The notes under the pieces were generated by a model, which searched no databases, was not told where the DNA came from, and saw only the letters and a list, made by a program, of their open reading frames with translations. Below, piece by piece: positions 14,221-54,912 of a stretch of DNA of 64,000 bases; position 1 is the stretch's first letter; the number at the start of each line of letters is the position of its first letter. The translations under genes and the position numbers were made by a program. The stretch spans positions 9,796,001 through 9,860,000 of the forward strand of contig NC_087255.1 of NCBI RefSeq assembly GCF_037042905.1, in the 5' to 3' direction. The DNA comes from Lytechinus pictus (Eukaryota).

Positions 14221-16023
14221 CAATATTTCATAGTTTAATACCTCCATTTCGTGTCGGGCGGACAAGAAAAATCGCCGCATCGGTCGCGCACATTTCACCA
14301 ACGGAAATATAAAAAAGCACATCATTTGAGTACGAGTATTCGCTTGCAAGTTGGCCGCGTGCAAGCTGCGAGAAGCGGCGAGAAGCTGCAAGGATAAAAT
14401 CTAGGATTAACGATTCTTGTTAATCTGCTTTAATCTGAGCAGCGCGCTGCCGCTAGCTGCGTCTAGCGGGGAGATACATCCTGTTCACTAATTACCGCAG
14501 CGGGGGTGTGCTCGCCGGGTGCACGCTGCCAATACAATATGGATGCTTTCCCTAAGTTAGTGATGTAGATCTACTAGAGCTAACGTTAGATCTAACTTAG
14601 AATCTACCGTACTTAAAGTTCCACTTCATTACCCACTCATATTCGTAACTAGACCGTGTAGACCTAACAGTTAGGCTTGGTCCTAGTCTGCGTGGAGTGT
14701 AGGCCTAGACCTCTAGATCTAGGGTCAATCCTTTTTTTATTTGATAGAGTCTATGATTCTAAATTAGATCTAGATAAGTTAGAATATAATGATAAAAACA
14801 ATTTCATATACTGCAAATCTAGTCTTGCATTTCAGATCACAAACATTATTAAGTTATCTAGAATCTAGATCTAGAGTTCTAACTTACATGTGCAACAGTT
14901 AGGTCTATACAGCTCTAGTGTAACTGTCAATACATGTGTGACAATCTTCAAGTTGTGCATGCCATGGCAACTTTGTTGTCAGCGACATGAACGATTCGTC
15001 ATGCAGTGGGTTTCCGTGCAGTGCTACATGATAAATTAATTTTCATGCATGACAAAATATTTGTCATGCATTACGAATTAATTTCCATGCATGCCAAACT
15101 GATTTCTTAGCATGACGAATCAAAATGAAAATTCGTCAAATAAGACCACTTTTCATTACGAATTTAAAATTTGTCAAATTACAAATCTTTTCCCATAAAT
15201 AATTGACGAATTCAATTTGTCAAGGAATTCTGCTTGCATGACAAATTTATTTGACGAATTCAAAGTTTGACAAATGAGACCATGTTTTGACGATTTTTTT
15301 GTCAATTGGCTAGGTATTTTTTTAAAGTGTAACCATGAGAAAACTCTGCCCTCCACGAACATAAAGGTCTTTTCCCACATTATTTAGGGTGCAACCTTTA
15401 TAAAGAGTGATTTGTATGGACAAGGCTAAGTCAGCATTCAGAATCTATTGTTTGGTTTTATATAAAGTAATGCTTTCTTTAAACACTTTACAATGCAATG
15501 CACACATATGTGTGCATATGACCATAAATCTAAAATGTACTCTGTGTGTATTACAACTGTGAATGAAATGAAACTTGAGTCTTAGTTGGAAGCCCATACT
15601 ATCTTACTCTAGTTCCGAATACACATTTTCTGTATACTCTAACTGTAGAAGTAAAAAAAAATCCGGATTTCCGTTTTCAAAAGATATGCTCTATATCGAA
15701 TACATATTAACATCCGATAAAAGGAAACACTAGAAAGACTGAACTGCAAGTTCTCAGTTGAGAAATTTTAAATTTGAATCTATTCATGAGTGAGGTGTCG
15801 CATATATATACGCAATGTGTGTACTGTGATCTTTGAAGAACAGGAAGTTCACGCATTATTATTGCGGAGTATCATTTGTCCTTTAGTCCAACAATTTTTG
15901 TTTTAAATGGCAGCCCTTCATACTCTAAAGGTGTTAATATATTGCGTGTCATCTTTATTTTGTTTCCCGATATCAATACAAGGTACGTTGCTTGAGTTCT
16001 CATTGATTTAAACGTTCATATAT

Positions 16024-22460: not shown

Positions 22461-22689
22461 TCATTCATGTACAAGTGAACCATGCCGAACATTTTCCTGT
22501 TGATTTCAAGTGGTTACCTTGCCAGCTAATCTAGCTCAATATCGGGGGGGGGGGGGGGGGGGGGTCGGAATTTGAGGGGCGTCTGCCGGGGGCGTCCCAC
22601 CACTTAAAGTGTCAGTTAAGTGTCATTCATGTACAAGTAAACTATGCCGAACATTATCCTGTTGGTTTCAAGGGGGCTGACCCCTCCTG

Positions 22690-36632: not shown

Positions 36633-36953
36633 GTGAAGTGGTCCATATCACAGTGCTGACCGAAAAATATACCACGATAGAGACCCTCTCTGGTCATGCT
36701 GGTGTACAGTACCAATGCTACCGCAGTGTACCGGACAGAGATGCCTCATTGTCATTTGGTCGATCTGCACCTATTACAACCAATAGATCACCGCCTAGTG
36801 ATCAGCCACATTTTGTATATAGTCATGTCAGAGTGATCAGATTCCCTAACAACAATAATTGGCCTTCAGATGGTTTTGGTCCCTTCTACTGTGAAGCTGA
36901 AAAAGAGGATCGAGACATTACAAGGGTTACTACATTTTTCCAGAGAAGTGATG
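36633..36953 (+). CDS. Tie-like receptor exon: N-terminal Ig-like domain
   Basis: cag|GT GAA GTG..; EVVHITVLTE...VQYQCY...DGFGPFYCEAE...TFFQRSD|gtatgt; phase 1/1. Confidence 0.82.
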
Positions 36954-39900
36954 GTATGTAACACTATACATTTTGTTTCAGTCGAAATCGGGAAAAATAA
37001 CTGTCAATACTAGCAATTAGATTAACAGTTCAAGAATTTCTTAATTTTGGTGGATTTATATCAAGGGGACTATCAAAAAGGCTCTACCGGATGTGCACTT
37101 TATTAAGTTGAAGGGATGTGACGTAGTCGTTTTTGTGTATTATTATCATAGTTACCATTATTATAATTATTATTATTATTATTATCATCATCATCACTAT
37201 TATTATCATCATTATCATTAGAAGTAGAATTAGTACTATTTTCGTTATTATATGTACACCGATTATTTCCAGCCAACTGTCATATACCTTCATATTTTTA
37301 TGAAATTCATTGCAGTCATGATTTATTGGTAAAATCAATCGAAGCTCAATTGATTTTCTTAATATATAACAATAACACCATGGTTCTAGTTTTTTTTTTC
37401 TCTTATTTACTCTCTTCTTCCTACTCAATCTCAATCTGTCTCTCTTTTCGTAATCCCTCTCTATATACTTCATCGATTTTGTTGCTTACTTTCTATTTTA
37501 TTTTCTTAATTTTCTTCAATTTTTTTTCTTCTCTAATTCGATCTTCTGTCTTGGACCTTGTTTTGGGGTCTGTCTGTATTTCTTTTTTCTCTCTACAGTC
37601 CTCTTCTCTTCTCCTTTTCCCTGTTATATGGCTCTTTTCTCTATCCCTATTTAGATGAGTTATCGCGAGAGGTAATAACAACTATGTTATTTGTATATAC
37701 CTGCCAAGTGCTCCAAAACCAACAATAGTCGCACAAATGAATTTTCGAGATTTTTACACTTGAAGATAATGAAGCACATACTAAGCTTTGAAATGATATA
37801 TTCTGTAACTTGTCAAACTTGTTCAGTAATAGCTAAAACATGAAGAACTTTATTGAATGTAAACGAAATATAGTGAGAGCTTCAAAGAGTAAATAAACAC
37901 AAGGTTTGAATTTTAGGGTTCACTCCAGCAATAGCTTTATCTTGTATTCTCCTCAACTTTACAGCCTCAAACTTGACAGCATGAAGAAGAAGAATATTTT
38001 TTTCCCCAGAATAGCCAATCTCCCACTTTTTCCTTTTTGAAGAACAAGTTTCTATATTTGGCTACTTACAAAAAAAAACCTTCCCTGGCGACTTATTGTT
38101 GTTTGGTTGGTTTTTTGTTGATCTATATACCTACTTGTATTTCGCTGTTTGCCTGCTTGTTGATTTTCTTTTTTCAAAGAAATTGTTTCAACATAATTGT
38201 GTAGTCAAATTTTATTGATATTACTTGGCTTTATTACGTGGTTTGGAATTGTAGATTTACTACGGACTGCTAATTGTGACACAAATCTCTTATAAAAAGT
38301 TAAATCTATCAGATTATTTTAAAGACAGGTTGTTTATAATCATCAGGAGTTAGTAAATATAATAATTAATTTCATACCACTAAAGCATGATATTTTCAAA
38401 CAAACTTGTGATATTCGGCATTCCATTATTTGAGAACACAGTTAAAGACCATGATGTAAGTTAAATCAGACATGGACTACTAAATTTAATTATAATCACA
38501 ACTTCACTTATTGTAACAGGATCAGATATATCGCATACAATTTTTTTTTGTTGTAAACTTTATGTTAACAGCTAAATTCATAACAAGTGATGGCGTGTTT
38601 ACGCAGACAGTCAATGTGAATTACACAGGAGTGGTGATCTCAATGACTAATCGAGACCAACCTGATGATAATGGCAATGTGATTACATGGAGGAAAGATG
38701 GTGGTAATGTTCTTACACAATTTGAGGGACAGACCAATATCAGCTTCCCAAACCCAATCCAGATGTCAGACCAAGGGATTTATGAGATCTACTATGGTGG
38801 CGAGAGGGACCAAAACAGAGGAGGAATATTCCGACTTATTGTCAGGGGTAATCTTTGCTTTATTTCTAATCACTTTTGAATAGAATGATTTGGAATTACC
38901 TTAATAACCAAACATACTTTGACATACTTACTTGTTTTCAACGAGGCAATGGAACTTTCCATGGTCTCGGCTAGTTCTCTGTTTATCTTGTTCTTTCTAT
39001 TTGTCTCTTTTGTGTATGATATTAGAATGTCCTGCTGGTAAGTGGGGTCCACCTGAATGCCATGGTATATGTGATAACTGCTATAATGGTGGAGTCTGTG
39101 ATGACAAGTCTGGTCTTTGTATCTGTCCTAACAACTTCATGGGAGAAAACTGTTTAAAAAGTGAGTATGGCCATTGATTTTTAGTTTAATACTTAGAGCA
39201 TATATTATTTTATTATTACCATAATTATGATTTATACTGCTATATCCATCATCATCATAAATCAATTCATGTTTTGCAATGTAAGTAAGCATATTAACAA
39301 AGTACATGACATGACTTACATGTACATGTATTATAGTCCTAACACACTCATGGAAATGTCTTTGGAAAATAGGTGAGCAAATAATGCAGGGAATATGGTT
39401 GATTTGTTTGTAGTACATGTAAATGTGGTACTACTTTATGGCATAACTAATTTGAGTAATGTTAAGGTTTGTTAAAATGACTCTGTTATCTTTGATATTG
39501 GATTACAAACTAAGAAATGCACCATGTAATGCATCTTTCCATTTCCAATTCAAACGTTTCTTCAGTTTGCAGGAATGATGGAGGGAATAGGTTTGGATTA
39601 ACATGTGAATTTGAATGCTCAAGACGTAACTTAAATACTAGCTGTCGTGGCCTTCTGTTTTGCCTACCTGATCCTTATGGATGTTCATGTGATGTTGGTT
39701 CCCAAGGTCTTGCATGTGATCGCGGTACGTGTTGTGGACAATAATTCCCGTAAATCTTGTTCCAGTTAGACTGGCATATTTTACTAAAGAAACGAATGAT
39801 TAGGTGTAGTATTGACATGTTTAAAGATTCAATCAGTTTAGAACTGGCATTTTTACATCTATCACATTTGTAACACTGATTACATCTTCACAAAACGGGA

Positions 39901-42900
39901 ATTTATTCGTTGATTTCGAACTACTAAGTGTGATATACTAGTATATCTTATTGTGCTAACTGAAACACAACACATCTGTCTCGACCATGCCTGTTCCTAA
40001 CATGTAGAATAAATTGTATGTTATTTTTAATTCAATGAACATGCAAAGTCCTATATGCATTTTTTTTAAGTGAAGTAATGTAGGTGAAAAACACGAAAAA
40101 GGAAAAGGAGGGGAGGAAGAGGAAAGAGAGAGAGAAATGGAGGCTATGGAAATTAATGTAAAAAATATGTTAAGAATTAGGAATAATAATTATTTATGTT
40201 AATTGTGTCCTTCTGAACTGTCTCTCAGATTGTGATATTGGCACATATGGTCCAGGGTGCTCACAAACATGTAACTGTGCTGATGTATCAGCATGTGATC
40301 CTTTCAGTGGAATTTGTACTACAGGTGGATGTCAGTCTGGCTGGTCAGGGAACAATTGTCAAAGTAAGTCTATACTAAACCATTCTTACATATTTTTTCT
40401 TTTATTCTCAAAGAATTGGGGAACTGCAAAGATAATCTCTATCTTGTACATAATCCTCTGTATCCGCAACATGAAAAGCACCTGTCAGTCAGTGTCTTAT
40501 TCCAGAGTATATACTAGCTGATGAGCTATGCCCGTATAAAAAAAGGATTAAAGAAATCTAGGGATACAGTTTGGGGATCCCTGTTTGAAGGGAAATGCTT
40601 TATTGAAAGAAAATACTTGTTTGAATTCTTTGTTGAAAGCGTGCGTATTAAATATCCTTGGTTACAAATTATAAATGCTGCATTTACTACGTCTTATTAT
40701 TTTTCCTTTTCATTTCTCAGTTCCTGATATCTGTGAGGCTGGATACTATGGATCAAATTGCACGGATAAATGTCATTGCATGGATGATGTATCTTGTGAT
40801 AAAACAACAGGAGCATGTCCTATGAAGTGTGCCTTGGGGTACAGCGTACGTAATGGTCAGGAAAATTGTCAAGGTAAATAATTTTTCATTGACTCTTATT
40901 CAATTTCTCAAAGAATACATACGATATACTTACAAGTATTTCACAGTTTTGTATCAGTGACATAGGTATATATCAACCTCACATCAGTTTTATTTGTGTC
41001 CTTTAAAAAAAATTGGGGGTGGGAGTAGGTTCGTCCAAGTATAGTCTCTATCCCCACATACTCTCACTCTTACACTAATTCAACATCTCTTGGTTATTGA
41101 ATGAGCATTTCCCGCCACTTAGAATGTCACCTTGATTAATCTATAACAAGCTATAAAAAGCTGCTCTTGGTCCAGACACTTATTTACTACATTCTTGCAT
41201 TATATTAATGTTCAGGTTATTTAATTCACATTTCGGAGCTTTTCTTCATACCAGGCATGACCTAGCACCATACTGACCCATGTTTTAAAAAGAGTATATA
41301 TAGAGCGAAAACAAATGTAGTTTTCTTCTGGTGATGATTTCTTAGATATTGGTTATATTGACAAAAACTGTTTGGAATACAAAAGATTAAGGAAATTATT
41401 ACTGTCTTCCTTTCCCCCTTAAGACTTCATTTAATTTCTAAACTGCTAGTTGTAATGACATCTTTTGACTTCTTACACAATGTTGTCATGATCAGGTGAT
41501 TTATATCAGACTTATATAAAATTACTTCCTAAGGATCCAGCGTTACAAAATTTCTGTTCCAAATTAGGAAGATTTTTTTTCGTGCTGATATTATCACATT
41601 CAGTGAAAATTGGCATTTCTGGATAAATTTATATCTGCAAATTCAATAATTATAAGTTGTTTACTTATCCCTCAAGTAGAATGTAGGCTGTCTAATGGAA
41701 AGAGTAACATTTTTGTACATTTATCAAATGAAATGATTACCAATCATACGTAATGCAAATGTTAAAATTGTCATTAAAATTCCATAATTACTACACACCT
41801 GCCAATACTACTGGTACTCTCAGTAGGTCCGTTGTACTTGACCACCACCCCCATCTATTTCCTAATGATGTAATTTGATTCCACTTGACTATATCAAAAA
41901 TTAGCTTTTGTTTTAAATATTTTTCATTTAACTCTTATCGTGTAGAATGTGAAGAAGGTAGGTTTGGCCTGGATTGTCTTCAGCAATGCCACTGTGCTCC
42001 AGAAGCCTGTGAGATACAGAGAGGATTGTGCGATGGACAGTGTCTTACAGGCTGGATTGAACCATACTGTCAAAGTAAATATATCCATTAATTTGTGTTT
42101 TCTTTTAATGTGAAACTCTGTACATGATACATTTATCACTTTGATGGCAATAATATACTGACTGTTGTTTTCACTGGGAGCCAAAATTATAAAGATATCT
42201 ATCAAATCTTGTATGAAATCTTAGGAGCTGGTGAATAAATTTTAAAATACCAAGTATTGAATTCGTTTATAAATAGGGCTCATTAGGAATGAGAGTAGGT
42301 TGGGCAATTGGTCAATCAGTTCTTTGGTCAATCCATCGCAAATGGTGGATCAAACCACATTCTTAGTTTTCACTAAGCATGCTAAGTGGTCATAAGACTT
42401 GAGACAGACTCATTGGAATTGGAGTGAATTGAAGAGGCAAGACACATATTGGCAATGTTTCGGATACTGCATTGAAAATTTTCACAGTACATATAATATT
42501 TCATTTTTATTTATGAATTGTTAGAAATGTAACCTTGACTACTTGAATTATAAATTCACTCTCGGATTTCTACCTTGGTTATTTTAAGGAATATCACGCT
42601 ATGACTTAGTAAGAGTGAATCCATACCAACCATCAATCATCACATGTTATGTTGAGGGGATCCCACTTCCTGATGCCTCATCAGTTGATCTTCGTCGACG
42701 TATTGATACCAACACTTACAACATCACGGGAATCACCAAGCGATCAAGCTCTGTATCAGGGTCAGAACGGGGTGTTCACTTTGATATTGAAAATGTTTAT
42801 CCACCAGAAGATGGGGACTATGTCTGTGGTCTTATTATAGAAAACCAGTTCTACCCAACAAGCATTACTAATATAACCTATGGTGAGCAATAGCATAACA

Positions 42901-44188
42901 TCACTCTATAAAATGATAACTTAATTTTTTAATAGATATCAATGTAGGTAGCAAAAGTTTATTTTCCATAGTGCAGAATCATTACTATAATTATCAGTAA
43001 TCATATTTTCAAACTTATTTTTAAACAGTTATATAAGTCTTGTAATGTCTTTTTCTAATTTCCTGTGATATACATGTACATGTATGAATAAACTGAGCTT
43101 TAAACTCCCTCATTGAATATAAATCAGTGTCAGATAATAAATTGTAAACTAACACAATCACCAGCAGTGGCCATTCTAATCTTTAAGAAAAAAAGAACAG
43201 CAGCTATGAAAATGACTTTATGTTAGTGGTAACGAAATATAACAGATGATAATGTCAGTGAAAATCATAATATCAGAAGCTTATTATTTGTGAACCAAAA
43301 AAGGAAGAAATATCTGGTAAGTAATTGCGAAAGATTATGCCAGAGATGACAATTCAGATATCAACAAGAGACCAGAATATTGTCAGAGGTAATTATACCA
43401 GTTGTATAAAAGCTTTACTCGTTCATAAGAAGTATACTTACATATTCTCAAGATTCATCTCCATGGAAATGCTGAGATGCTTCAGTCATTGATAATGGAA
43501 AAATATAGGCGTATAATCTTATGAATTATGTAATCTCATGTTCTGCCTCTTTCTCTATTGCTTTCAGTTCTTCCTGTCATAAGTACGGCACCATCTATTG
43601 TCAGCACCACTTCAACTACAGTATCTATACAATGGAATGCCTGGTCTGCAGGAAAAGACATAGGTGATCCTCCCCTTATAGGATATGATGTATTTGTAAG
43701 AAAAGGTGGCATCTGGGAAATAGATCAGAGAGTAGATGACTCTATCACTTCAGCTACTGTTAGTAACTTGACTCCTGACACAGAATACAGGTTTCGTGTT
43801 GCAGCCGTGAGGGAAGGAGAGGGTGGAACAGGTCCATGGTCTCCAAGGATTGATGCAATCACTCTGTGTACAGGTAAATTAATCGTATTCTGTAATATTT
43901 GAATATTTTTTGGTAAGTGCCATTTCAACCCATATAATGTATATAATTGCTTGAGCAGTTGGAGATTTTCAGCATGAGCAGAATAAATATTTATGATTCA
44001 TAATTTTTACGTGCATTTAAAATTGTATTTTTCATTTGAATCAATTTTTCAGCACCAAGGTCTCCCCCAGCTGGAATACAGGTGACAGCCAACAATCCTA
44101 AAGAACTAGAAGTGACATGGGAGGTAATGAAAGTGATGAAAGTGTTGTTATTAATCTAATACTACTACCCCTTCTTTTTCTGCTACTG

Positions 44189-44227
<39 letters not shown>

Positions 44228-45205
44228 TTACTACTATTACTACTACTACTACTACTATTACTACTATTACTACTATTGCTACTTCAACTACTACTATTAC
44301 TTCTAATAATACTGTTGCTGCTGCTGCTGCTGCTTCTACTACTACTACTAATACTACTAGAACTGTTAGTACTACTACTATTGCTACAACTAATACCACC
44401 ACTTGTTCTTCATATTTCTTAATATGCTTACCGTACATCAAAATTTCTGCTAGCGCTTCGCGCTCACACTATTCAATTAGGGCTTGTATGAGATTATTAT
44501 ATATTTATGTTTCATAAGAATAAAGCTAAGAAGTGACTAATTTGACTACCCCTTAAACAAACACATAAATCAGCTTTGAGCTGCCGATCGGGGAAAATAT
44601 GGGTATTTTTTCGCCCCCCTCTATTGCAGAAAGCTGGATCTGCCCCTGTTCTATTATTACTAATACTAATTATAATTAAATGTGTACTTATACCTTTACT
44701 GCTGCGGCTGCTATTGCTGCTACTACTACTTCTACTCCTGATGATGCTAATAACAGTTATTAATTTCCACCATTATCTTGCAGTTCCTCTCATTGGATTC
44801 AGCAAACTGCAGGAGTGGTGTGACCAATTATATGATCTACTATGCTCTCTCTGGTTCATCATCCACAAACTCTCGCATAGTTTCTAATGATACAAGCTCC
44901 TATACGATAACAGGGCTGGGGACCTATCTGGACTATACCATTGAAATAAGTGCTTCAAATAAAGATGAGGAAAGTGACAAGAGCAGTGAGATAATCGGCA
45001 GAACACTTGAAGAAGGTTTGGTCGATTTTTAAGTGATTTGTTTTGTGATGGCTGGCACGAGCTTCGCTATTCAAGGCAATTTTCTACATAATTACTATTC
45101 CCAATTCCTTGCAGAAGCTTAAGATTTAATTGTTATCTAAGAAATCTTATTATTTGATATTCTTTGGTATATTTTATCTGATTCTGTTTTTATTTGTTAT
45201 ATACT

Positions 45206-45238
<33 letters not shown>

Positions 45239-47768
45239 GGGGGGGGGGGTAAATCCGCACATAAACATGATTAATGTCATGTTCTACAATTCCTTTTAAA
45301 GGAGAATGAAACTCTTGGAGCAAGTTAGCTTTTGTGAAAGCAGAAAAATCAAAGAATAAGATCAACAAAACTTTGAGTAAAATAGGACTAGCAATAAAAG
45401 AGTTATGAGCATTTGAATGTCGAGATCACTAATGCTATGGAGATCCTCCCGTTGGCAATGCGACCAAGATCTGTGATGTCACACACGTACAACTCTCCCA
45501 TTCGGACACTGAAAATATACCCCAAAACATCTCTTTTTGCTCATTCTAATCATATGACAAACGATTCATCAATGATATAATGTTGTGAAACCTCTGTACT
45601 TGTCATCTCATAAAGAAAACACCTAACCTTGTGATAGACTCTATAAAAGTGAGAATATAAGTGAAAAATGTACTAAAGTAATGAGGGAGTTGTACGTGTG
45701 TGATATCACAGATCTTGGTCGCATTGCCGATGGGAGGATCTACATGGCACTAGTGATCTCAATATTCAAATGCTCATAACTTTCTTATTATTCATTCAAT
45801 CTTCCTCAAACTTTCAACAATATGTTTCTTTGATTTTTCTCTTTGATATGGATTCAGCTGGTTTCAAGGGTTTCATTCTCCTTTAAGCTCTTAAATTTGA
45901 ACTGATTTGAACTACCACTTTTTTATAATTTGATATACGATTATTTGCCGGTTTTAATCTTATTTATATCATTTCTTGTTTTAATTCGATAACCATGTTT
46001 TATTTTTCTCTCCGTATTACAATGAAGGTAATTTTATTCACAAGTTTGATTATAATTACATATTTACATTCATTTCTATTTTACGTTATTCTGTGTAAGC
46101 ACCGGCCAATACGAAGATCCTCACGACAGAATACAATAAATATATTAATAAATATATAAATAAATTCAAGCGTTTCACCTTAAAGATCTCCTGTCATTCA
46201 ATTCCCTCTATCAGTTGCACCAGCTCCTATCAACGTGGCCATACCAAGAAGTACTAAAAGTTCTTTCACTGTGTCGTGGTCCACTCCTCTCCCATCGAAC
46301 GTAAATGGTCATATTCAGATGTACACCATTCGCTACAAGCAAAGCGATCAAGGAGATGATGATGATTATATCATGGAAAATGCGTTGACAGATGCATTTG
46401 AAGCAGAACATACTGTGACGAATCTTCTGTATGGTGTTAACTATACAGTTCAGGTAATACAACGATTCTCGGTCTCATTTCTTTTCGCTTTCTTTCATTA
46501 TGGATAATCACACAACTCAAATCAAAGAACAAAAGGCGTTCATACGTTCCAATGACAATCATGACAAAGTATGGACTTCGAATTATTTTATGACTGATAT
46601 ACTTCAGTACAGTTGTAAACTATTTGAAATGATTCTTAATTGCCAAATTGTGGATTAAAGTACATAAATATTCATATTTAGATATTATAACGTATGAATA
46701 TAGGCCTACTTAAAAAAAAATACCATTAAAAATGACATTTATAGATAAAGAATGTGCCATGTTATTCATAATTGGATTAAAGTACAAGAATATTTATATT
46801 TAGATATTATAGCGTATGAAGATAGGCCTACTTTAAGGAAAATCACCATAAATTACAATATTACTGGATAAAAACGTGCCAGGTTATTCATAATTTTACA
46901 TTTATCGGACCAATAAACAATTTAACAAAATTCAAATAAAGTCATGACATATTATGGATTTCGAATTATTGTATTTATTTTATATGTATCAGTACAATAA
47001 TTAATTATTTCAAATTTAATTGCCGATTTGTGGTTGAAAGTACAATAAAAATATTTTATTCATATTGGGACACTGTAGCGTATTTAGATACTTTAAAGAA
47101 AATCAATCATCAACAATTCGTATTTATTTTTGATCAGTGATCATTAGATTAGATTTTTTTCATCGTTTCCAAGGTCCAAACTGTCAATGGAGCTGGTTCT
47201 AGTAAGTGGTCGTACCCAGTCAGAGCTAAGACCATCCTTGCTGGTCATCACTGTAACGGGGTGCAAGTAGGCACTATAATTGCAGGTGTTTCAATACCTC
47301 TAATCATCATCATCATCTTCCTCATCATTCTCAATGTTGTTACGTATAGGAGGTAGGTTAATTGAAATTTCATAATTTTAATGATTTTTTTATTGGAATA
47401 TGTTCTCAGTAGGATATCTTTGTATGTAACCATTAAAGCCTTTGTTAATATGATTTGGTTTAAAAATATGATAGTAGACATATTGTGAATTGATTTTCAG
47501 GGCCAGACTAAGACATCCAGTCACCGCATCGTCAAAAGACACTGCACGTGAGCCATCCCCAAGGTATGAGAACCCTGCATTTGATGCATCCATGCGCACC
47601 TGCAAAAACGTGGATAAAGACACCTACCAAGATCTCGATATCGACACCAGGGACTACCAGAACCCTACTGACCCCCACACATATCAAGGGCTTAAGAAAA
47701 CCAGCATCGATACCTCGCATCAGAGTGTCAGCCAACCAGAGCCGGAAATCACTTATGAATACATTTAG
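36633..47768 (+). CDS. Tie-like single-pass receptor lacking a kinase domain (Ig-Ig-EGFx5-Ig-FN3x3-TM-Tyr-motif tail); 14 exons, 5' end incomplete
   Basis: join(36633-36953,38572-38847,39026-39160,39566-39724,40229-40363,40721-40873,41946-42074,42589-42882,43568-43873,44053-44123,44784-45015,46215-46453,47174-47352,47501-47768). All introns GT-AG, phases consistent, no internal stops, about 965 codons. Confidence 0.9.
37140..37235. repeat. (ATT/ATC)n microsatellite, intronic
   Basis: Direct reading. Confidence 0.85.
38572..38847 (+). CDS. Tie-like receptor exon: Ig domain 2
   Basis: FTQTVNV...ITWRKDG...SDQGIYEI...IFRLIVR; phase 1/1. Confidence 0.9.
39026..39160 (+). CDS. Tie-like receptor exon: EGF 1
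   Basis: ECPAGKWGPPECHGICDNCYNGGVCDDKSGLCICPNNFMGENCL. Confidence 0.92.
39566..39724 (+). CDS. Tie-like receptor exon: EGF 2
   Basis: NRFGLTCEFEC...CRGLLFCLPDPYGCSCDVG, the Tie1/2-type motif. Confidence 0.92.
40229..40363 (+). CDS. Tie-like receptor exon: EGF 3 (not in ORF track)
   Basis: DCDIGTYGPGCSQTCNCADVSACDPFSGICTTGGCQSGWSGNNCQ; cag|...|gtaagt. Confidence 0.9.
40721..40873 (+). CDS. Tie-like receptor exon: EGF 4
   Basis: PDICEAGYYGSNCTDKCHCMDDVSCDKTTGACPMKCALGY. Confidence 0.9.
41946..42074 (+). CDS. Tie-like receptor exon: EGF 5
   Basis: ECEEGRFGLDCLQQCHCAPEACEIQRGLCDGQCLTGWIEPYCQ. Confidence 0.9.
42589..42882 (+). CDS. Tie-like receptor exon: Ig domain 3
   Basis: VNPYQPSIITCYVEGIPLP...EDGDYVCGL; phase 1/1. 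Confidence 0.88.
43568..43873 (+). CDS. Tie-like receptor exon: FN3 1
   Basis: VSIQWNAW...DIGDPPLIGY...LTPDTEYRFRVAAVREGEGGTGPWS. Confidence 0.92.
44053..44123 (+). CDS. Tie-like receptor exon: FN3 2, first half (not in ORF track)
   Basis: APRSPPAGIQVTANNPKELEVTWE|gtaatg; phase 1/0. Confidence 0.88.
44158..44392. repeat. (TAC)n/(TGC)n microsatellite, intronic
   Basis: Direct reading; explains the poly-Leu and poly-Val ORFs. Confidence 0.95.
44784..45015 (+). CDS. Tie-like receptor exon: FN3 2, second half
   Basis: YMIYY...YTITGLGTYLDYTIEISASN...RTLEE; phase 0/1. Confidence 0.9.
45300..45882. mobile_element. Kolobok-like palindromic MITE, intronic
   Basis: ttaa|aggagaatgaaac ... gtttcattctcct|ttaa; internal ~100-bp inverted repeat 45403-45502 / 45680-45780. 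Confidence 0.85.
46215..46453 (+). CDS. Tie-like receptor exon: FN3 3
   Basis: SFTVSWSTP...NGHIQMYTIRY...VTNLLYGVNYTVQ; phase 1/0. Confidence 0.9.
47174..47352 (+). CDS. Tie-like receptor exon: end of FN3 3 and transmembrane helix (not in ORF track)
   Basis: VQTVNGAGSSKWS...VGTIIAGVSIPLIIIIIFLIILNVVTYRR; phase 0/2. Confidence 0.9.
47501..47768 (+). CDS. Tie-like receptor terminal exon: cytoplasmic tyrosine-motif tail
   Basis: tttcag| phase 2 matches the previous exon; YENP, YQDL, YQNP, YQGL, ITYEYI*. Confidence 0.85.
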
Positions 47769-49287
47769 AATCGACTCCTAAGCACAGTTCCACTACCGAA
47801 TTACAGAATGAAGCAAGTGCCAGAAGTGATGTGCGTGTATATCTGTGTGTGTGTTGGTGGGAGGATGCGTCTGTGTGTGTGTACATTTTTGTGTGTGGAA
47901 GAAAGAAATAACATAATATGAGTGTCAATAATTAATAAATGGGTGAGTATGGGTATGACAAATGAGGGTGTGTGTGTGAGTATGGTATAAACAATTAATA
48001 TAAGGGTGTGAGTATGGTGAGCAGAACTAATATGAGGGTGTAAATGATTGTGTGGGTGCACTGTTAGAAAATTTATCCTTAAAATAAAAGAAGTTCCTGC
48101 AGCAGAGTCTCGAGAACACCTGTAATCTTACAAGATTGCGTAATCTTACAGATAATTGGTATTTGGTGTATGGAACCTTACAAATTTTCTTTAATAAAAC
48201 ACCCTTTTCTCCTTTTTAAACATACCTGTTCTGTTAAATTGCAGAAAAATTCATGTTTTATGAATTTAAAAAAATCTATGTATAATTTGCATTCACATAT
48301 TCAATGATTATGTAGCAATATTCATGTTTGAAAGAGAAAAGAATAGATATCATTTAAAACCAAACTATAACAGTATAACGGATGAGAGAGGCGCACTTTA
48401 TCGGTTTTTCAAGAATGGGTGTTGAAGTGAGTATGTGACCCAACATCACCCCAAAACCAAGGAAGGTTCTTTAAAAATAGCTTAAACAGTCATGAATTTA
48501 GTTGGAAAAAAGAAAAAAATGAAAATCACCGTGTGCAAAATAATTCTCCTTCTGACAAAGTTTGAAGTTGTAAAATTCAATAAAAGATGCGAAGGACGCA
48601 GTTTTGATTTTTAACAATACCTTTTTTTTCCGGACTGCTTAGAAATTTCACTGAGATTCAATAGTGTCCTACGGTTGGGTGAATAGATCCCTTTGAATCT
48701 TCATGGCCTTAGGAAGCGGGGGTGCGAGGGGATTTTCCTAGGGGGTACTTAGTGTGTTATTCTCCATAGGCAGCACTCCCTGGAATTATGGTAGATGTGG
48801 CAAAATTTAGAAATATAAACCAAAATTTCCTCTTTTTTTTTTTTTTTTTGGGGGGGGGACTTGTCAGATTTATCGGGACCAAAACGACCTTCGTTTTGCA
48901 GTGAAACATTATTTTTTAGAGGAGGGGGGGGTGGGCTTGTTAAATTAACATCAGTACCCCTATGTTAAAAAAAAAGGTTCCATGACCCTACTTATTTTTT
49001 GAAGCTCTAACTTAATCTATTTTTCTATTCAATAATTTAAGTACTTCCGTAGTTTTTTTCTTTGTTTTTTGAGTTTTGAGGTATAACATATTATTTCAAA
49101 GCTTAAGATGTGCCACTTCCAGGTCAATGGAAATTTCAACATTCATCTTGGGCGTATATTGCAACCCTATCAAATTAAATATATAACACAGTATATTGCG
49201 ACAAAGTGATCGCAAACGATCGCAGGAGCAATTGGGAAAGCCCCCTAAGGGAGGAGCACCCTTCTCTGTATGTGGGGTTAATATTAA

Positions 49288-50877
49288 CCTGTATCGGCCG
49301 CACAGAAACGCTGTTAGCGTAACATTTCACTAACACTGCCGTAACAAAGGGCCCTGTTACAACCGGTAATCTCGCTGCGATGGCTATAATGCATTATTTA
49401 CATCTGAGATCAACGCTTGACATCACAATCTGTATAGTATTATCCATTAACAAATCAGCTCCAAACAACATGGGTAGAAATACCGCACAGAAGGCACAGA
49501 AAGCTGTTGTTAGGGGATTAGAGTGAGGCAAACTCTATTATTTGTGCGTAGTGATCTAGATTTAACTTAGATTTACGTATGATTATTTGCACATCCTACA
49601 AGTTTAAAATCTTGTCTAGGAAAGGGTAAAGGAATGGAATTCATTATCATATAGGCCTACAAAATTGAATTATTATTACATTTTAAACAAGAAATGGCAG
49701 CAGATAGTATATATATATTTACTAATGTAATTAAAAAAATATCGAATAAGCTTCAAAAAAATTGCCTATCATGATATTACGATGGAGATTCTGTACCAAA
49801 AAATGAAATCCCACCTTCCATCAGTTTCTTTTGTTGAAAATGCTCTTCACAGACTTCATTCATCATGCTCATGATAGAGTATTTGCCAATGATGGTTATC
49901 ATACGATAAATGATATATCTTGGAAGAAAAAAATCTTTGAAAAGGATCATAAATTTCGGCACTAATCAACATCCCCCGCTATATACCTATTCCTAAAGAG
50001 GTACAGGCTAAAGAAAAAAATACGGTTTGAACAGTAAAGTGAAACAAACAAAACACTGTCAAATTGATAAAAATTGGAAATGAATACAAAAAATTATGGT
50101 ATCTTAAAATTTTGCATTAGGCCCTATTTCGGTAAAATTTATATTCATGTCTTCAGGAATATGCAATGAGGGTCTGTTGTATCATACAAACTTAGGTTTA
50201 TATAAGTTTTGTCCACACAGAATATTGCTTCAAAGATCATCATTTTGTTACTCGGGCGAAATACACACATTTGAGACAATTATACGAGTCCATTTCAATA
50301 AAATCAGAAAAGGGGGAAAGAGCTAGAGGATATGACATTATCGTTCCATTGATTGCATATTCATGGCCACATGTTGCTCAGTAATATCAATTGCAAAGTA
50401 CAGTGTTATATTTTTAATATATAAGAATTTTGTTATTTTCTATCAGATTTTGATGAAATTTTCTACAATTTGCTCATCTAATTTTACTCATTTTTTGCAT
50501 ATACAGTTGGGCCCAGAATACCCCTTTAATTCGGTCGAGGTATATTTTAAATTACTTGGTATGAGCAAGGGAGACAAGTTTTAAAGAGAGAAAGTATTCA
50601 CTAACATCGTCACTATTGGTGTTCTTGGCACCGTCAGTGATTTGTATTAACATTAGCGCCACTGTTAGCTTCTGCTAACTTGCTAAGCCTTTTATTGTTA
50701 GATTATTAGCAATTCGGCTAAGCTTCTGTGAGTTTATCGATACCGGTAGGCCTACCTTTAGTGCACTGTTAGTGAAAACAATGTGTCAAGGCGGTGGTCA
50801 CCCGTGAAAGGTGTGACTGGCCCTAATGTTTGCGTTCTGTTACGCTAACAACGCTTCTGTGCCGTCGCCACTGGTGT
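49288..50877. mobile_element. Nested TIR element (hAT-like)
   Basis: gcacagaaacgctgttagcgtaaca ... tgttacgctaacaacgcttctgtgc inverted ends. Confidence 0.65.
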
Positions 50878-51633
50878 ACAAGGAGTTGTCGACTGTGGTA
50901 TGTGCTAGGATGTTCAGGGGCGTTGATTCGTGTGGGCGTGGTGTGTTTAGTGGGGGCGTTGTTAGAAGGGGTGGGGTAGCGGTAATTTGGGGAATGGAGG
51001 GAAGTCGATACAGCTCTTAGTTATGCCGACTCAAAAGCTGAAAGAACAGTTACTCATTCTTGATATAACAGCGAATCATTTATCTGAAAACAACCCTTTA
51101 TAGCTCATGTCTAACACTTAATTTAATGAGCTCATGAGCTCAATTACTCATTCTTGATATAACAGTGAATCATTATTGAGAAAACATTATCATATACATG
51201 TATCTGACTGTCTGCACTGGATTTTCTGCATTTGCTCATGACAGTATCAATTAAAACATCTATCAAATAAAAAGGGGTTGTCGTTCAATTTGTCTAGTTA
51301 TCTAGTGTTATTTTGGGAATATAAAATATATGTTATTGAGAATGAGTGTTAATAACGAATGTGAGGTTGTGCATGACGCTTTATTCCGATTAATTGTGTC
51401 CATAGTAATTCAGTCAAGTTGCAATACCAACATGCTGGGTGTATGAATGTAGGCCCTATGGTTCGACCTGCTGTCTAATATAGATATATGGACTGCTTTG
51501 AGAGGCATGGTTGTTTCTAGAGGCTCAATGGGACCGGAACGCGACTATGCCCGAGGGCATGATCTGGCCGATGCGGTACCCGCGAGCCGAAAGAAACAAC
51601 CGTGTCTCGAATATTAAAGCAGTCCATATATAT

Positions 51634-52620
51634 TTTATAAACCGAATTAATCGTTGGATCTACAAAATGTTAGGGCCTAGATTTAGTCTAGATCTTAAAC
51701 AAGTTAGGCCTAAAACCAATCGCTATAGGCCCCAGGCTAACTTTAGGCCTAGGCCCTAACTTTGCCCTGCCCTCGAAGTCGAATATCAAAGCATACCGGT
51801 ACTACTGGTCGGCCTAGATATTTTAGGAACCAGATTAGGGTATGAATAGGCATAGATCTAACCTAACGTAAACAGTCTTAAATTTCCATTAGAGTCTAGA
51901 TCCAACGTTAGATCTCTAGACTACGTCAGATTTAAGATTAAATGGAACATTAGGCCTAGAATCTAGGTCTAGTTAGATCTAAGTTAGATCTAGCGTTAGA
52001 GTCATGGCCTACTAACTCTAAGCTAACGTTAGATCTAACGACAACATTACCTTACGTTGTCGTTTGTCATACCTAACGAGTTACGTTATAGATCTAGCCT
52101 ATAGAAAGTGAAATGAACGTCTTATCTTTTCACCCGACTCACCTTTTGCGAGCATGCATTTGACCGACCAACTGCAACAAGACTTGATGATTAATACATC
52201 CGTTATGTCCTTAATAATTGGTTTCTTTTCAATAATGCCATATATTAGGAATTAGCAAGCAAAATTCAAAGATCGGCATCGTTAAATCGATTTGTCATAT
52301 CCGTTGCGCACACTTGCGCAATAGGCGCGTAAATGCGCGAATTGTCTAAAACTTTCGATCAAATCAGGTGGATATTTTTGGTATTCGCAATCCCCGCAGA
52401 AAGCAACATTTTGCATAAATGGGGATCTCAGGCAAATTTTGCTACGCCCGTCGTTAAGGGGCGGGTCAGGGGGAAACGGGCAGAAATCTTGTTAACTATG
52501 CCCGTTGCCCTTGTGTACCACCTTAGTTTGTTGTTTTGCAGGCATGGTGGTTTACATGACCTCAATTTTGACCAATCAGAGGAACGGATTATTTGACATT
52601 CTTAAAGAGAGGTTTATAAA
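51634..52620. mobile_element. Nested element with 10-bp inverted ends
   Basis: tttataaacc ... ggtttataaa; interior rich in tagatcta/taggccta palindromes. Confidence 0.45.
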
Positions 52621-53570
52621 AAAAGTTAATAACTTTTAGAGCTTAAATTTCCACTAAATATTTCATAGTTTAAATTATATCCCAAGCATACTATCATTCA
52701 ATTAATCTTGAATTATACATCGGATTTTGAATACTTGCAACATTGTGCAGATAGCAGAATTAACGATGGAAATAAAAATAATCTACATTTTCCTGAATAA
52801 ATTAAAAACATAGGGACCAAAAAACGCCCTCTACTACGCTACGTAGCTACAAAACCTACGCCTCAGAAGTCACCTAAGGTTCGTCTGATGTTGAAATTTT
52901 GCTTAATTTTCATATTGTCATTGTGTTATTAAAACAAGAAAAATCTCCATTGTACATTCAACAGTGTGGGTGAGCATGGGTGTGAAGAATGCCTATGATG
53001 TTGTTGGTGAGTATGGTGTGAAGAATGAATATGAGGGTGCGGGTTGATATGGGTGTGAAGATTAAATATACGGGAGTTGATGATCATTGGTGTGAAAAAA
53101 AAATGTGAGGGTGCGGGTTACTCTGGGTGTGAAGAACGAATATGAGCGTGTGGGTGAGTATGATGTGAATAATGAATATGAGGGTGCGGTTGAATATGGG
53201 TGGGTGAAGAATGAATATACGGGAGTTGATGATCATTGGTGTGAAAACAAAAATATGAGGGTGCGGGTTACTCTGGGAGTGAAGAACGAATATGAACATG
53301 TGGGTGAGTATGGTGTGAAGAATGAATTTGAGGGTGCGTGCTACTATGGAAGTGAAGAATGAATAAAATAAGGATGCGGTTGAGTTTGGGTGGGTGAAGA
53401 ATTAATATACATGTAAGGGATGTTGATAAATATGGGTATGCATGTGAGGCTGTGGGTTAGAATAGGTGTGAACAGAATAATGTAAAGTTGTGGTTGATTA
53501 TGGGTGTGAAAAATGAATATGATGTTGTAGGTGAGTATGGTGGAAGAATGAATATACAGGTCTGAGTGAG

Positions 53571-54912
53571 TGTCAGAGCGCCCCTGAATTAGTTAACTAC
53601 TTTTCCCTCTGCCTTGAATTCTTGTTATCCATTTGAAAGGAGCTGCACTTGGTCTTAATAATTGATATGCAAATCAACTCCACCACTTTACTGTAGGTTG
53701 AGTGCACAGTTTGTATAGTCAGTGGGGTGTGGAGCTATGTTGGGTGAGTTGCAGAGGTCTATACAGAAAGCTGGGACCATTTTATGATTTTTACTGAGGG
53801 AACACGCAGACCCTCACTGAGAAGGATTTCTTCTAGTTTTATTTTGCCAGCTTCAAGCTATTTACTGGCAGTTGGTTATTATTTCTACATTCCAGAAATC
53901 AAGTGTAAGTCTGTGATATTTCTATATTTTTTTTGAGGCAATTAATTTGTTCTGAAAGGTGACATTTTAAAATAGATGAGAGAATGTTGGTTTTGCAGTA
54001 ACATCAAATTAATAATCCATTCATTGGTATTTATGAAGCATATTTTGCAAAGGAAATTAAGACGTGACAGATTACCACTAATTATAAATTTGTGTATGTT
54101 TTTGACATAATTTAATGTGATCTACAACTTTTAATAGGAACTCAAGTTGTATAGCAGGTTTTATCATGAAGAAGTTTACTATAATTGTCAGGTGGCTCCT
54201 ATTTCATGGAAAGACTGATCCACGTCCGATTCCATGTCATTCATTCTGAAGGGGGCGCTATTCACGCTATTTATTCTGAGTGAACTACTCTACGTGATTG
54301 TGATCTCGGATCTGCTTTGTGACCCCAATCTGGGTGAGGGGGAGGTGATACGAGCGTTCCATTCTGCGATACATGGATTCATAGACAGTTCATCGATGAC
54401 GATTAAGTGATCAACGATCAACGTTTGTTCGATGTCAGTAAGTCTTTTCGACCGGTAAGCGGATATCGTTTTCAAGGAACATCTATATGCTCTACATTGG
54501 TGTTTACTCACTACGGAACTTTACTCGATGAGCATCGCTCTGATTCCGAAATCGCATATGCCAAAGACAATGATTGAACTGGACTAAAACAAGCTATTTC
54601 CACCTGAAATAATTGTATATGAGCTCAAATGTCATGCCGGTCCGGTTTTGATATTAATAATCCTTTTTCCAAAATTTACATATCAAAGTGTAATCTGTCA
54701 CTCTAGGGGTTTTAGTCTTTGTATTTCATATTCATTTCACTTGTAGTTATGAATGATGTACTTCGACTAGAGTTAAAGGAATTTACAAAGAGGAGTGATT
54801 GACTGTAAACCTTGAAAAGGTGATAGTTTGAATATTCTGTTAATAAAGCTAAACTTAAATTTAAAGTAGTCGTTCTGTTTTTATTATTCTGTGTACAAGC
54901 TTTTACCTGACA
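53571..54912 (+). mobile_element. Solo LTR (1342 bp)
   Basis: gtgag|TGTCAG ... CTGACA|gtgag: TG..CA ends, 6-bp terminal inverted repeat, 5-bp TSD, aataaa at 54842. Confidence 0.85.

What the first reader, a model, noticed from the sequence alone, without database searches (positions are those of the whole stretch)
36633..47768. Intact Tie-type receptor in which a short tyrosine-motif tail replaces the kinase domain
Seen: 14 phase-consistent exons give Ig-Ig-EGFx5-Ig-FN3x3-TM, including FCLPDPYGCSC, then one ~90-aa terminal exon and a stop. No kinase or phosphatase exon is recognisable in the following 16 kb. Known: Tie1/Tie2 are Ig-Ig-EGFx3-Ig-FN3x3-TM-kinase and bind the fibrinogen domain of angiopoietins through Ig2. 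Inference: a catalytically inert, adaptor-recruiting Tie-like receptor, possibly one of an expanded invertebrate family that reads fibrinogen-domain (FReP) ligands in immunity, or a co-receptor/decoy for a kinase-bearing paralogue.
Basis: partly seen in the sequence, partly recalled or inferred. Interest (0 to 1): 0.82.

Follow-up and report, generated by a model that had tools for sequence, protein, structure and literature searches.

The report
Tie-like receptor with tyrosine-motif tail
This is an intact, transcribed sea-urchin (Lytechinus pictus) gene for a receptor whose outside resembles the vertebrate angiopoietin receptor Tie2 but whose inside is only a 90-residue tyrosine-motif tail. 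It is one of eight such genes lying beside four phosphatase-bearing twins, a layout that recalls paired activating and inhibitory immune receptors.

Summary
Window 36633-47768 carries 14 in-frame GT-AG exons encoding Ig-Ig-EGFx5-Ig-FN3x3-TM plus a 90-aa tail and a stop. I add a signal-peptide exon at 15907-15982, giving 15 exons and 990 aa. RNA data move one acceptor from 47153 to 47174.

- **Tie2 likeness:** the ectodomain is Tie2-like by sequence (PDB 4k0v, E 1.4e-44) and by fold (2gy5, E 4e-29).
- **No catalytic exon:** neither the window nor the surrounding cluster holds a kinase or phosphatase exon downstream of the tail.
- **Transcription:** RNA contigs and stranded reads cover the last three exons only.
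- **Tail conservation:** the tail is open in all 8 genomic copies and is conserved in Strongylocentrotus.

The interpretation needs one correction. The nearest relatives are not Tie kinases; the true Tie gene lies 18 Mb away and is 25-50% identical. They are four neighbouring receptor tyrosine phosphatases, 81-95% identical from Ig2 to FN3-2 and unrelated from the third FN3 inward.

Ectodomain trees group by genus, not by cytoplasmic module (AU p 4e-90). This indicates exchange between the tail-type and phosphatase-type genes.

My best reading is the adaptor-recruiting arm of a paired receptor system; that function is inferred. RefSeq names these proteins 'angiopoietin-1 receptor-like', and I found no paper describing them. 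The scan holds an unchecked, similar note on another locus of this genome (s1-317487).

The parts
15907..15982 (+). Exon 0: start codon and signal peptide (25 aa + first base of Gly codon), donor CAAG|gtacgt, phase 1
   Evidence: tblastn of the signal peptide of paralogue model P0079. Sequence read. Joins in frame to 36633.
36633..36953 (+). Exon 1: Ig1
   Evidence: Open frame and splice sites. 12 copies in the cluster falling into two sequence types. Confident Ig fold in the AF2 model of the allelic protein.
38572..38847 (+). Exon 2: Ig2 (the ligand-binding domain in Tie2)
   Evidence: 12 close copies on C11. Aligned to Tie2 Ig2 within the 4k0v alignment.
39026..39160 (+). Exon 3: EGF1
   Evidence: PDB phmmer to Tie2 185-232, E 4e-10. 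Pfam EGF_2.
39566..39724 (+). Exon 4: EGF2 with FCLPDPYGCSC
   Evidence: PDB phmmer to Tie2 237-279, E 1.4e-7. Acceptor 39566 is required for the frame.
40229..40363 (+). Exon 5: EGF3
   Evidence: Aligned to Tie2 EGF3.
40721..40873 (+). Exon 6: EGF4 (extra relative to Tie1/2)
41946..42074 (+). Exon 7: EGF5 (extra relative to Tie1/2)
42589..42882 (+). Exon 8: Ig3
   Evidence: Second aligned stretch to Tie2 387-510. Copies listed.
43568..43873 (+). Exon 9: FN3-1 (VREGEGG motif as in Tie2)
   Evidence: Pfam fn3, E 1e-11..
44053..44123 (+). Exon 10: FN3-2, first part (an alternative in-frame donor lies at 44132)
   Evidence: Donor 44123 matches paralogue models P0002 and P0078. No RNA was laid here.
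44784..45015 (+). Exon 11: FN3-2, second part
   Evidence: Pfam fn3, E 2.4e-6..
46215..46453 (+). Exon 12: FN3-3, first part; start of the type-specific cassette
   Evidence: RNA contig depth and the joint 46453>47174. Identity to the phosphatase paralogue drops to 55% here.
47174..47352 (+). Exon 13: end of FN3-3 plus the transmembrane helix
   Evidence: Acceptor 47174 fixed by spliced RNA contigs in runs X19 and X1. Open in all 8 copies.
47501..47768 (+). Exon 14: cytoplasmic tail (YENPAF, YQDL-x6-YQNP, YQGL, C-terminal TYEYI) and stop
   Evidence: RNA contigs 47499-47654 and 47625-47779, and stranded reads. Exactly 8 copies in the genome, all open. 90-99% identical where intron 13 is 69-98%. 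Orthologous tails in S. purpuratus. dN/dS 0.2-0.65.
47769..47955 (+). Probable short 3' UTR with AATAAA at 47934
   Evidence: An RNA contig runs past the stop to 47779, and there is depth in bin 47676-47872. The first 270-290 nt after the stop are 88% conserved in most copies, including those whose intron 13 is only 69% identical. Signal found. The cleavage site was not observed.

Best explanation
Shown:
- The locus is a complete, transcribed 15-exon gene of Lytechinus pictus. It encodes a 990-aa type I membrane protein: signal peptide, Tie2-like ligand-binding region (Ig-Ig-EGFx5-Ig), three FN3 domains, one TM helix and a 90-aa non-catalytic tail.
- It is one of 8 tandem tail-type genes (C11 9.54-10.03 Mb, all + strand). 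They lie directly beside 4 receptor tyrosine phosphatase genes (8.95-9.50 Mb) with the same ectodomain.
- From Ig2 to the second FN3 the two types are 81-95% identical. This gene's Ig1 and Ig2 are closest to phosphatase genes.
- From the third FN3 through the TM helix into the cytoplasm the two types are type-specific.

Inferred mechanism:
- The tail is a phosphotyrosine scaffold. Ligand-driven clustering would let Src-family kinases phosphorylate it.
- The family-level YxxL-x6-YxxL (ITAM spacing; degenerate to YQNP in this copy), the YxN sites and the C-terminal YE(Y/E)I would then recruit SH2 proteins of the Syk, Grb2 and Src types.
- The phosphatase-type twins would read the same ligands and deliver the opposite enzymatic activity.
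- The gene would thus be the adaptor-recruiting arm of a paired receptor system whose recognition domains are kept alike by gene conversion or exon exchange.
For: - Gene model and ORF.
- Transcription, strand and splicing.
- Tie2 homology of the ectodomain: by sequence; by fold, AF2 pLDDT 91.9 with Foldseek top hits 2gy5, 4k0v and 9lv4 at E 4e-29 to 2e-18 and the next hit at 6e-8.
- No kinase or PTP in the window or near it.
- Eight open tail copies found only in this array.
- Tail exon better conserved than its intron.
- Tail orthologues in L. variegatus and S. purpuratus keep YENPxF, YQDL-x6-YQNL, YQxL and C-terminal YE(E/Y)I.
- Four phosphatase genes in the same cluster.
- Per-domain identity break between FN3-2 and FN3-3.
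- Ig1 and Ig2 best matches are phosphatase genes (90% and 93%), while Ig3 best matches are tail genes.
- Mosaic DNA identity along the gene.
- Ectodomain trees group by genus, with tail monophyly rejected (delta lnL 198.6, p-AU 3.6e-90).
Against: - No phosphorylation, binding or expression-site data exist; every signalling step is inferred from short motifs, which occur by chance in Tyr-rich disordered tails.
- In this particular copy the second ITAM tyrosine reads YQNP, not YxxL.
- Tail dN/dS of 0.2-0.65 shows only moderate constraint.
- The E13>E14 junction was not directly displayed.
- RNA depth is low, and cross-mapping from the 99%-identical neighbouring copy cannot be excluded.
- The AU-tested group was named after a first tree had been seen.
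- YxxL and NPxF are also endocytic sorting signals.
Confidence: 0.6

Rival explanations
1. One reading: a Tie receptor tyrosine kinase derivative that lost its kinase. It would act as a co-receptor or decoy for the kinase-bearing Tie paralogue, as Tie1 modulates Tie2.
For: - The ectodomain architecture and fold are Tie2-like.
- A true Tie kinase gene exists on the same chromosome.
- Vertebrate Tie1 and Tie2 are known to heteromerise (established knowledge).
Against: - The true Tie (P0183) is only 20-65% identical per domain, lies 18 Mb away and falls in the other half of the N-terminal tree.
- The gene sits inside an echinoderm clade whose crinoid, holothurian and Diadema members carry PTP domains.
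- The tail is conserved and motif-rich rather than vestigial.
Confidence: 0.1
2. An endocytic or phagocytic uptake receptor. The NPxF and YxxL motifs would serve as sorting or engulfment signals, as NPxY and YxxL do in CED-1/Draper/MEGF10. There would be no antagonism with the phosphatase paralogues.
For: - The tail holds YENPAF (NPxF) and two to three YxxL motifs conserved across genera.
- The ectodomain is EGF-rich.
- CED-1, Draper and MEGF10 tails use NPxY plus YxxL/ITAM (established knowledge).
Against: - There is no sequence homology to those tails or to their EMI/EGF ectodomains; the ectodomain matches Tie2.
- This reading does not explain why near-identical ectodomains are kept on phosphatase genes.
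Confidence: 0.2
3. A transcribed but functionally decaying duplicate, or an adhesion molecule whose tail has no signalling role.
For: - Tail dN/dS reaches 0.6.
- The ITAM-like motif is degenerate in this copy.
- RNA depth is low.
- A young transposon sits in intron 11.
Against: - All 15 exons are open with intact splice sites.
- All 8 copies keep the same stop and the tyrosines.
- The tail motifs persist in Strongylocentrotus.
- The exon is more conserved than its intron.
Confidence: 0.05

Closest known systems
Vertebrate Tie2/TEK (and Tie1) receptor tyrosine kinases
   Same: - The domain order is Ig-Ig-EGF-Ig-FN3x3-TM.
- The alignment to Tie2 residues 76-320 and 387-510 is colinear (E 1.4e-44).
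- The FCLPDPYGCSC and GEGG motifs are identical.
- The predicted fold matches the Tie2 ligand-binding domain far better than anything else in the PDB.
   Different: - There are five EGF modules instead of three.
- There is no kinase domain: the tail is 90 aa.
- The gene is not in the kinase-bearing clade.
- It is a member of a 12-gene cluster.
- The ligand is unknown.
Echinoderm receptor tyrosine phosphatases with a Tie-like ectodomain (e.g. P0081 and P0082, RefSeq 'receptor-type tyrosine-protein phosphatase mu-like', L. pictus)
   Same: - They lie in the same cluster.
- They are 81-95% identical from Ig2 to FN3-2b.
- Ig1 and Ig2 of this gene are closest to phosphatase genes.
- They fall in the same clade in all trees.
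   Different: - Identity in the third FN3 and the TM helix is only 50-55%.
- The cytoplasmic part is unrelated: ~230-aa juxtamembrane region plus two PTP domains, against a 90-aa tail.
Paired activating/inhibitory immune receptors of vertebrates (KIR, LILR, SIRP, PILR, CD300)
   Same: - Genes are clustered, with near-identical ectodomains on alternative signalling modules.
- There is evidence of sequence exchange between the two types.
- An ITAM-type motif is present on one arm at family level.
   Different: - The ectodomain fold is unrelated.
- The opposing arm carries phosphatase domains covalently, instead of ITIMs that recruit SHP phosphatases.
- The ITAM-like motif is in the receptor's own tail rather than on an adaptor.
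- Function is untested.
CED-1/Draper/MEGF10 engulfment receptors
   Same: An EGF-rich single-pass receptor with a short tail combining an NPx(Y/F) motif and YxxL motifs.
   Different: There is no EMI domain, the ectodomain is Tie-like, and no sequence homology of the tails was detected.

Membership tests
Tie receptor tyrosine kinases | Ectodomain Ig-Ig-EGFx3-Ig-FN3x3 homologous to Tie1/2 | tested here: met
   - PDB phmmer to Tie2 4k0v, E 1.4e-44, colinear.
- Foldseek to 2gy5, E 4e-29, TM 0.61 by target.
- One deviation: five EGF modules instead of three.
Tie receptor tyrosine kinases | Intracellular (split) tyrosine kinase domain | tested here: not met
   - The ORF stops 90 aa after the TM helix.
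- Pfam finds only fn3 in the allelic model P0078.
- There is no kinase similarity in the window or in C11 8.9-10.1 Mb.
Tie receptor tyrosine kinases | Orthology with Tie1/2 (groups with kinase-bearing Ties) | tested here: not met
   - The N-terminal tree puts the L. pictus, sea-star and amphioxus Tie-type proteins on the other side from the tail/PTP clade (support 88, unrooted).
- Identity to the true Tie P0183 is 20-65% per domain.
Tie receptor tyrosine kinases | Binds angiopoietin fibrinogen domains through Ig2 | not testable with these tools
   No ligand sequence or binding assay was available.
Receptor-type protein tyrosine phosphatases | One or two cytoplasmic PTP domains with the HCxxGxxR motif | tested here: not met
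   - There is no PTP similarity in the window.
- No PTP exon lies between C11 9.50 and 10.10 Mb.
- The tail shows no significant match to the paralogue's cytoplasmic part.
Receptor-type protein tyrosine phosphatases | Ectodomain shared with family members | tested here: met
   The gene is 81-95% identical to P0081 from Ig2 to FN3-2b and nested in the echinoderm PTP clade.
Paired (activating/inhibitory-type) receptors | Closely similar ectodomains on alternative cytoplasmic modules, encoded in one cluster | tested here: met
   - The cluster holds 4 PTP-type and 8 tail-type genes within 1.1 Mb.
- Identity table.
- Ig1 types are shared across both module classes.
Paired (activating/inhibitory-type) receptors | Ectodomain homogenisation or exchange between the two types | tested here: met
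   - Trees group by genus, not by module.
- AU test rejects tail monophyly, p 3.6e-90.
- DNA identity along the gene is mosaic.
Paired (activating/inhibitory-type) receptors | ITAM (YxxL/I-x6-8-YxxL/I) on, or recruited by, one arm | tested here: inconclusive
   - YQDL-x6-YQNL is present in 4 of 8 L. pictus copies and in most of the aligned S. purpuratus tails.
- This copy reads YQDL-x6-YQNP.
Paired (activating/inhibitory-type) receptors | Opposite signalling outputs on a shared ligand | not testable with these tools
   This needs cell and binding assays.
CED-1/Draper/MEGF10 engulfment receptors | EMI domain plus long EGF array; tail with NPxY and YxxL | tested here: not met
   - There is no EMI domain, and the ectodomain is Tie-like.
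- Only the motif-level resemblance of the tail (NPxF, YxxL) is met.

The most novel reading that the evidence does not exclude
Echinoderms may run a paired-receptor system built on a Tie-like recognition module.
- One arm carries tandem phosphatase domains covalently.
- The other carries an ITAM-like, Src-SH2-type tyrosine tail.
- The recognition domains (two Ig1 types, with Ig2 and the EGF modules) are shuffled between the arms by gene conversion.
- Each ligand would then be read by an opposing pair.

This would be an invertebrate solution to activating/inhibitory balance that is independent of ITIM/SHP recruitment. It might be used for immune or self/non-self recognition. Short Tyr-tail and PTP versions also coexist in Diadema and in crinoids, so the system could be phylum-wide.
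Probability: 0.35. Interest if true: 0.85.

Novelty: new variant of a known kind. Interest (0 to 1): 0.62.

Why it matters
- **Modularity of the Tie ectodomain:** outside vertebrates the Tie ectodomain is not tied to a kinase. In echinoderms it is a modular recognition unit joined to phosphatase domains, hyalin-repeat stalks or tyrosine-motif tails.
- **A testable candidate:** the cluster found here has 8 tail genes and 4 phosphatase genes with exchanged recognition domains. It is a concrete candidate for paired receptor signalling in an invertebrate deuterostome.
- **Link to vertebrate biology:** in vertebrates Tie2 is controlled by a separate receptor phosphatase, VE-PTP. Here the two functions sit on look-alike receptors.
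- **Annotation:** the RefSeq names ('angiopoietin-1 receptor-like', 'phosphatase mu-like') hide the relationship. At least one model (P0078) appears to start in a probably transposon-derived ORF instead of the signal-peptide exon.

Tried and rejected
- **Paralogue DNA:** Paralogue structure rests on match tables and on database proteins.
- **Ig2 exon alone against the PDB:** this gave only weak TCR hits. The homology to Tie2 Ig2 appears only in the full-length alignment.
- **Pfam on single exons:** it did not recognise any Ig domain.
- **The 47352>47501 joint:** Read laying did not list it, because 47295-47333 (the TM codons) was skipped as a repeat. Only indirect support remains: a contig starting 6 nt before 47499 that does not fit the intron, and RefSeq-type models reading YRR|ARL.
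- **Tail against phosphatase cytoplasmic regions:** no significant similarity (best E 0.013), so the tail is not a remnant of the juxtamembrane segment.
- **Literature:** seven searches (one more failed on syntax) and one read paper found no description of kinase-less Tie-like or Tie-ectodomain phosphatase families in echinoderms.
- **Rfam:** no family matches the highly expressed repeat 3' of the gene.
- **Pseudogene reading:** considered and rejected.
- **Complex prediction:** not used, because no ligand or partner claim rests on it.
Full report
**1. What is in the sequence**

The window is C11:9796001-9860000 of an 812-Mb intron-rich genome. Names attached to near-identical database proteins identify it as Lytechinus pictus.

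Between 36633 and 47768 the + strand holds 14 open stretches. With canonical GT-AG sites they join in frame to one stop codon. Most domain exons are phase 1-1, as expected for shuffled extracellular modules.

Two boundaries needed correction:
- Exon 4 must start at 39566 for the frame to hold.
- Exon 13 starts at 47174, not 47153.

Exon 10 probably ends at 44123, as in paralogous gene models.

A signal-peptide exon lies 20.6 kb upstream at 15907-15982. It has an ATG, 25 mostly hydrophobic residues and the donor CAAG|gtacgt, also phase 1. It was found with the N-terminus of paralogue model P0079. The complete ORF has 15 exons and 990 aa, with 50 cysteines and 10 N-glycosylation sequons.

**2. 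Is it transcribed and does it end in the short tail?**

I laid two contig runs (X19, X1) and two raw stranded RNA-seq runs (X21, X22) of the same species on 46100-52000.
- They cover exons 12, 13 and 14. There is no depth in 46494-47084, which lies in intron 12.
- First mates lie on the minus strand, which means a + strand RNA.
- Three contigs from two runs carry the GT..AG joint 46453>47174.
- One contig covers 47499-47654 and starts 6 nt upstream without fitting the intron. Another runs 47625-47779, past the stop.
- The joint 47352>47501 itself was not listed, because the ATC-rich TM codons (47295-47333) were masked.
- It is the junction used in every database model of the family: YRR|ARL in P0078, P0079 and P0085, and CRR|VKL in P0002.
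- An AATAAA lies at 47934. The first 270-290 nt after the stop are 88% conserved in most copies, including those whose intron 13 is only 69% identical. This fits a short 3' UTR.
- Depth is low. Reads from the 99%-identical upstream neighbour cannot be separated from reads of this gene.

**3. No catalytic domain**

- tblastn of 23 kinase ORFs taken from this genome finds nothing in the 64-kb window (best E 0.27).
- The cytoplasmic parts of the phosphatase paralogue and of the species' true Tie kinase also find nothing (best E 1.2).
- Genome-wide, Pfam PK_Tyr_Ser-Thr and the true Tie kinase domain give no hit between C11 8.9 and 10.1 Mb. The true Tie gene is at 28.01 Mb.
- A PTP-domain query gives no hit between 9.50 and 10.10 Mb.

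Alternative splicing from this gene to catalytic exons nearby is therefore excluded at this sensitivity.

**4. The ectodomain is Tie2-like**

- The EGF1 and EGF2 exons hit Tie2 residues 185-232 and 237-279 as the best PDB matches.
- The ectodomain of P0078 is this gene's model from another assembly or allele. It is 100% identical in Ig1 (apart from a 3-residue indel), the TM exon and the tail, 97% in Ig3, and 79-95% elsewhere.
- That ectodomain aligns colinearly to Tie2 76-320 and 387-510 at E 1.4e-44. The next best hit is RPTP-mu FN3 domains at 2e-21.
- An AlphaFold2 model of Ig1-Ig3 (38-row alignment, pLDDT 91.9, pTM 0.80) finds the three Tie2 ligand-binding-domain structures at E 4e-29 to 2e-18. 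Everything else is at 6e-8 or worse.
- The difference from Tie1/2 is two extra EGF modules.

**5. The family and its neighbours**

- The tail exon occurs exactly 8 times in the genome, all + strand, at C11 9.55-10.03 Mb.
- The Ig2 exon has 12 close copies. The four without the tail (8.98-, 9.21-, 9.44-, 9.48+ Mb) each have PTP-domain exons 15-57 kb downstream on the same strand.
- The cluster is therefore 4 phosphatase-type genes followed by 8 tail-type genes.
- Database proteins confirm both types. 'Angiopoietin-1 receptor-like' models end in the tail. 'Receptor-type tyrosine-protein phosphatase mu-like' models P0081 and P0082 carry two PTP domains.
- A third type in L. variegatus joins the same Ig-Ig-EGF module to hyalin repeats (P0003).

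**6. Where the two types differ**

Identity per domain between this gene and P0081:

| Domain | Identity to P0081 |
|---|---|
| Ig2 | 94% |
| EGF1 | 95% |
| EGF2 | 81% |
| EGF3 | 88% |
| EGF4 | 92% |
| EGF5 | 83% |
| Ig3 | 86% |
| FN3-1 | 89% |
| FN3-2 (two exons) | 95% and 83% |
| FN3-3a | 55% |
| FN3-3b + TM | 50% |
| Cytoplasmic part | unrelated (22%) |

- Among tail genes the last three parts are 76-100% identical.
- The tail shows no significant similarity to the phosphatase juxtamembrane region.
- The type-specific cassette is therefore FN3-3 plus TM plus cytoplasm. Everything N-terminal of it is shared.

**7. Exchange between the types**

- Ig1 exons fall into two types. This gene's type is shared with two phosphatase genes (90% and 84%) and two tail genes (82%). 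The other seven genes, of both classes, are 61-69% identical.
- The best Ig2 matches are phosphatase genes, at 93% and 92%.
- The best Ig3 matches are tail genes, at 89-92% against 78-86%.
- At DNA level the 3' 1.9 kb is 99% identical to the upstream neighbour. The Ig2-EGF2 segment is only 89% identical to that neighbour, 94% to another tail gene and 90% to a phosphatase gene.
- In trees of the ectodomain, Lytechinus tail and Lytechinus phosphatase proteins are sisters (100/100). The S. purpuratus phosphatase P0099 nests among S. purpuratus tail proteins.
- Holding all tail proteins together costs 198.6 log-likelihood units (p-AU 3.6e-90). Yet the tails of the two genera are plainly orthologous.
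- The simplest reading is concerted evolution or repeated exon exchange of the recognition half between the two receptor types.
- Caveat: I named the tested group after seeing the first tree.

**8. The tail**

- All 8 copies keep the frame and the same stop.
- Conserved in Lytechinus and Strongylocentrotus:
  - (K/R)YENP(A/V)F;
  - TYQDL, then six residues, then YQN(L). This is canonical ITAM spacing. This copy and two others read YQNP, and one reads YQNS;
  - HTYQ(G/D)L;
  - a C-terminal TYE(Y/E)I.
- From established knowledge, pYEEI is the optimal Src-family SH2 ligand, pYxN is the Grb2 SH2 motif, and NPx(Y/F) is a PTB or endocytic motif.
- dN/dS among the copies is 0.2-0.65. This is typical of a disordered tail in which only short motifs are constrained.
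- Short Tyr-rich tails also occur on Tie-like ectodomains of Diadema (VYQDL-x6-YMAV) and crinoids, next to phosphatase versions.

**9. Interpretation**

Shown: an intact, expressed, kinase-less and phosphatase-less Tie-like receptor that belongs to a mixed tail/phosphatase cluster with exchanged recognition domains.

Inferred: the tail acts as a phosphotyrosine docking site, and the phosphatase twins oppose it on the same ligands, giving a paired-receptor logic.

The clade's crinoid, holothurian and Diadema members are phosphatases, and the true Tie kinase is distant.

Rivals:
- an engulfment or endocytic receptor of the CED-1/Draper style;
- a Tie co-receptor or decoy;
- a decaying duplicate.

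**10. Novelty**

The proteins exist as automatic RefSeq predictions. Seven literature searches found no description of the family, of Tie-ectodomain phosphatases, or of the pairing.

They also hold an unchecked note on kinase-less C-type-lectin receptors with ITAM-type tails elsewhere on this chromosome (s1-317487). That hints the tail-versus-phosphatase theme may recur, but I did not test it.

Noticed in passing
window 45296-45886: A ~590-bp element with ~207-bp terminal inverted repeats sits in intron 11. Copies 97-99% identical lie on at least 15 other chromosomes. It looks like a very young MITE-type insertion specific to this gene copy.
   Followed up: partly
window 48059-48267: A ~210-bp stretch just 3' of the gene has RNA depth of 884-1861 in the contig runs and the highest raw-read depth, with loose ends on both sides. 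It has no Rfam match. It is probably an expressed interspersed repeat, not part of this transcript.
   Followed up: partly
window 22644-23297: A 218-aa ORF lies inside the 20.6-kb first intron. Database model P0078 uses it as its N-terminus (98% identity) instead of the signal-peptide exon at 15907. Pfam finds nothing. It is either a probably transposon-derived chimeric annotation or an alternative promoter.
   Followed up: partly
window 36633-47768 versus protein P0078: The database model of this gene is identical in Ig1 (apart from a 3-residue indel), the TM exon and the tail and 97% in Ig3, but differs by 5-21% in Ig2, the EGF modules, FN3-2 and FN3-3a. This could be strong allelic mosaicism, conversion between copies, or an assembly difference.
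   Followed up: no
G000 C11 28.013-28.017 Mb (outside the window): The kinase exons of the species' true Tie receptor (P0183, 85-95% identity per exon) lie 18 Mb from the cluster on the same chromosome.
   Followed up: no
proteins P0003, P0108, P0109 (L. variegatus): The same signal peptide-Ig-Ig-EGFx4 module (71-74% identical to this gene) is joined to five hyalin (HYR) repeats, a TM helix and a different short tail. This is a third module class of the family.
   Followed up: no
window 29274-29720 and 5496-7856: There is a reverse-transcriptase fragment (RVT_1, E 7e-6) and a 787-aa ORF without any Pfam match.
   Followed up: no
window 52000-56000: GC skew is strong (0.25-0.31) over 4 kb. A 303-aa ORF on the minus strand (54715-55623) has no Pfam match. 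This is unexplained.
   Followed up: no
window 44183-44396: A (CTA)n microsatellite of about 71 units lies in intron 10.
   Followed up: no
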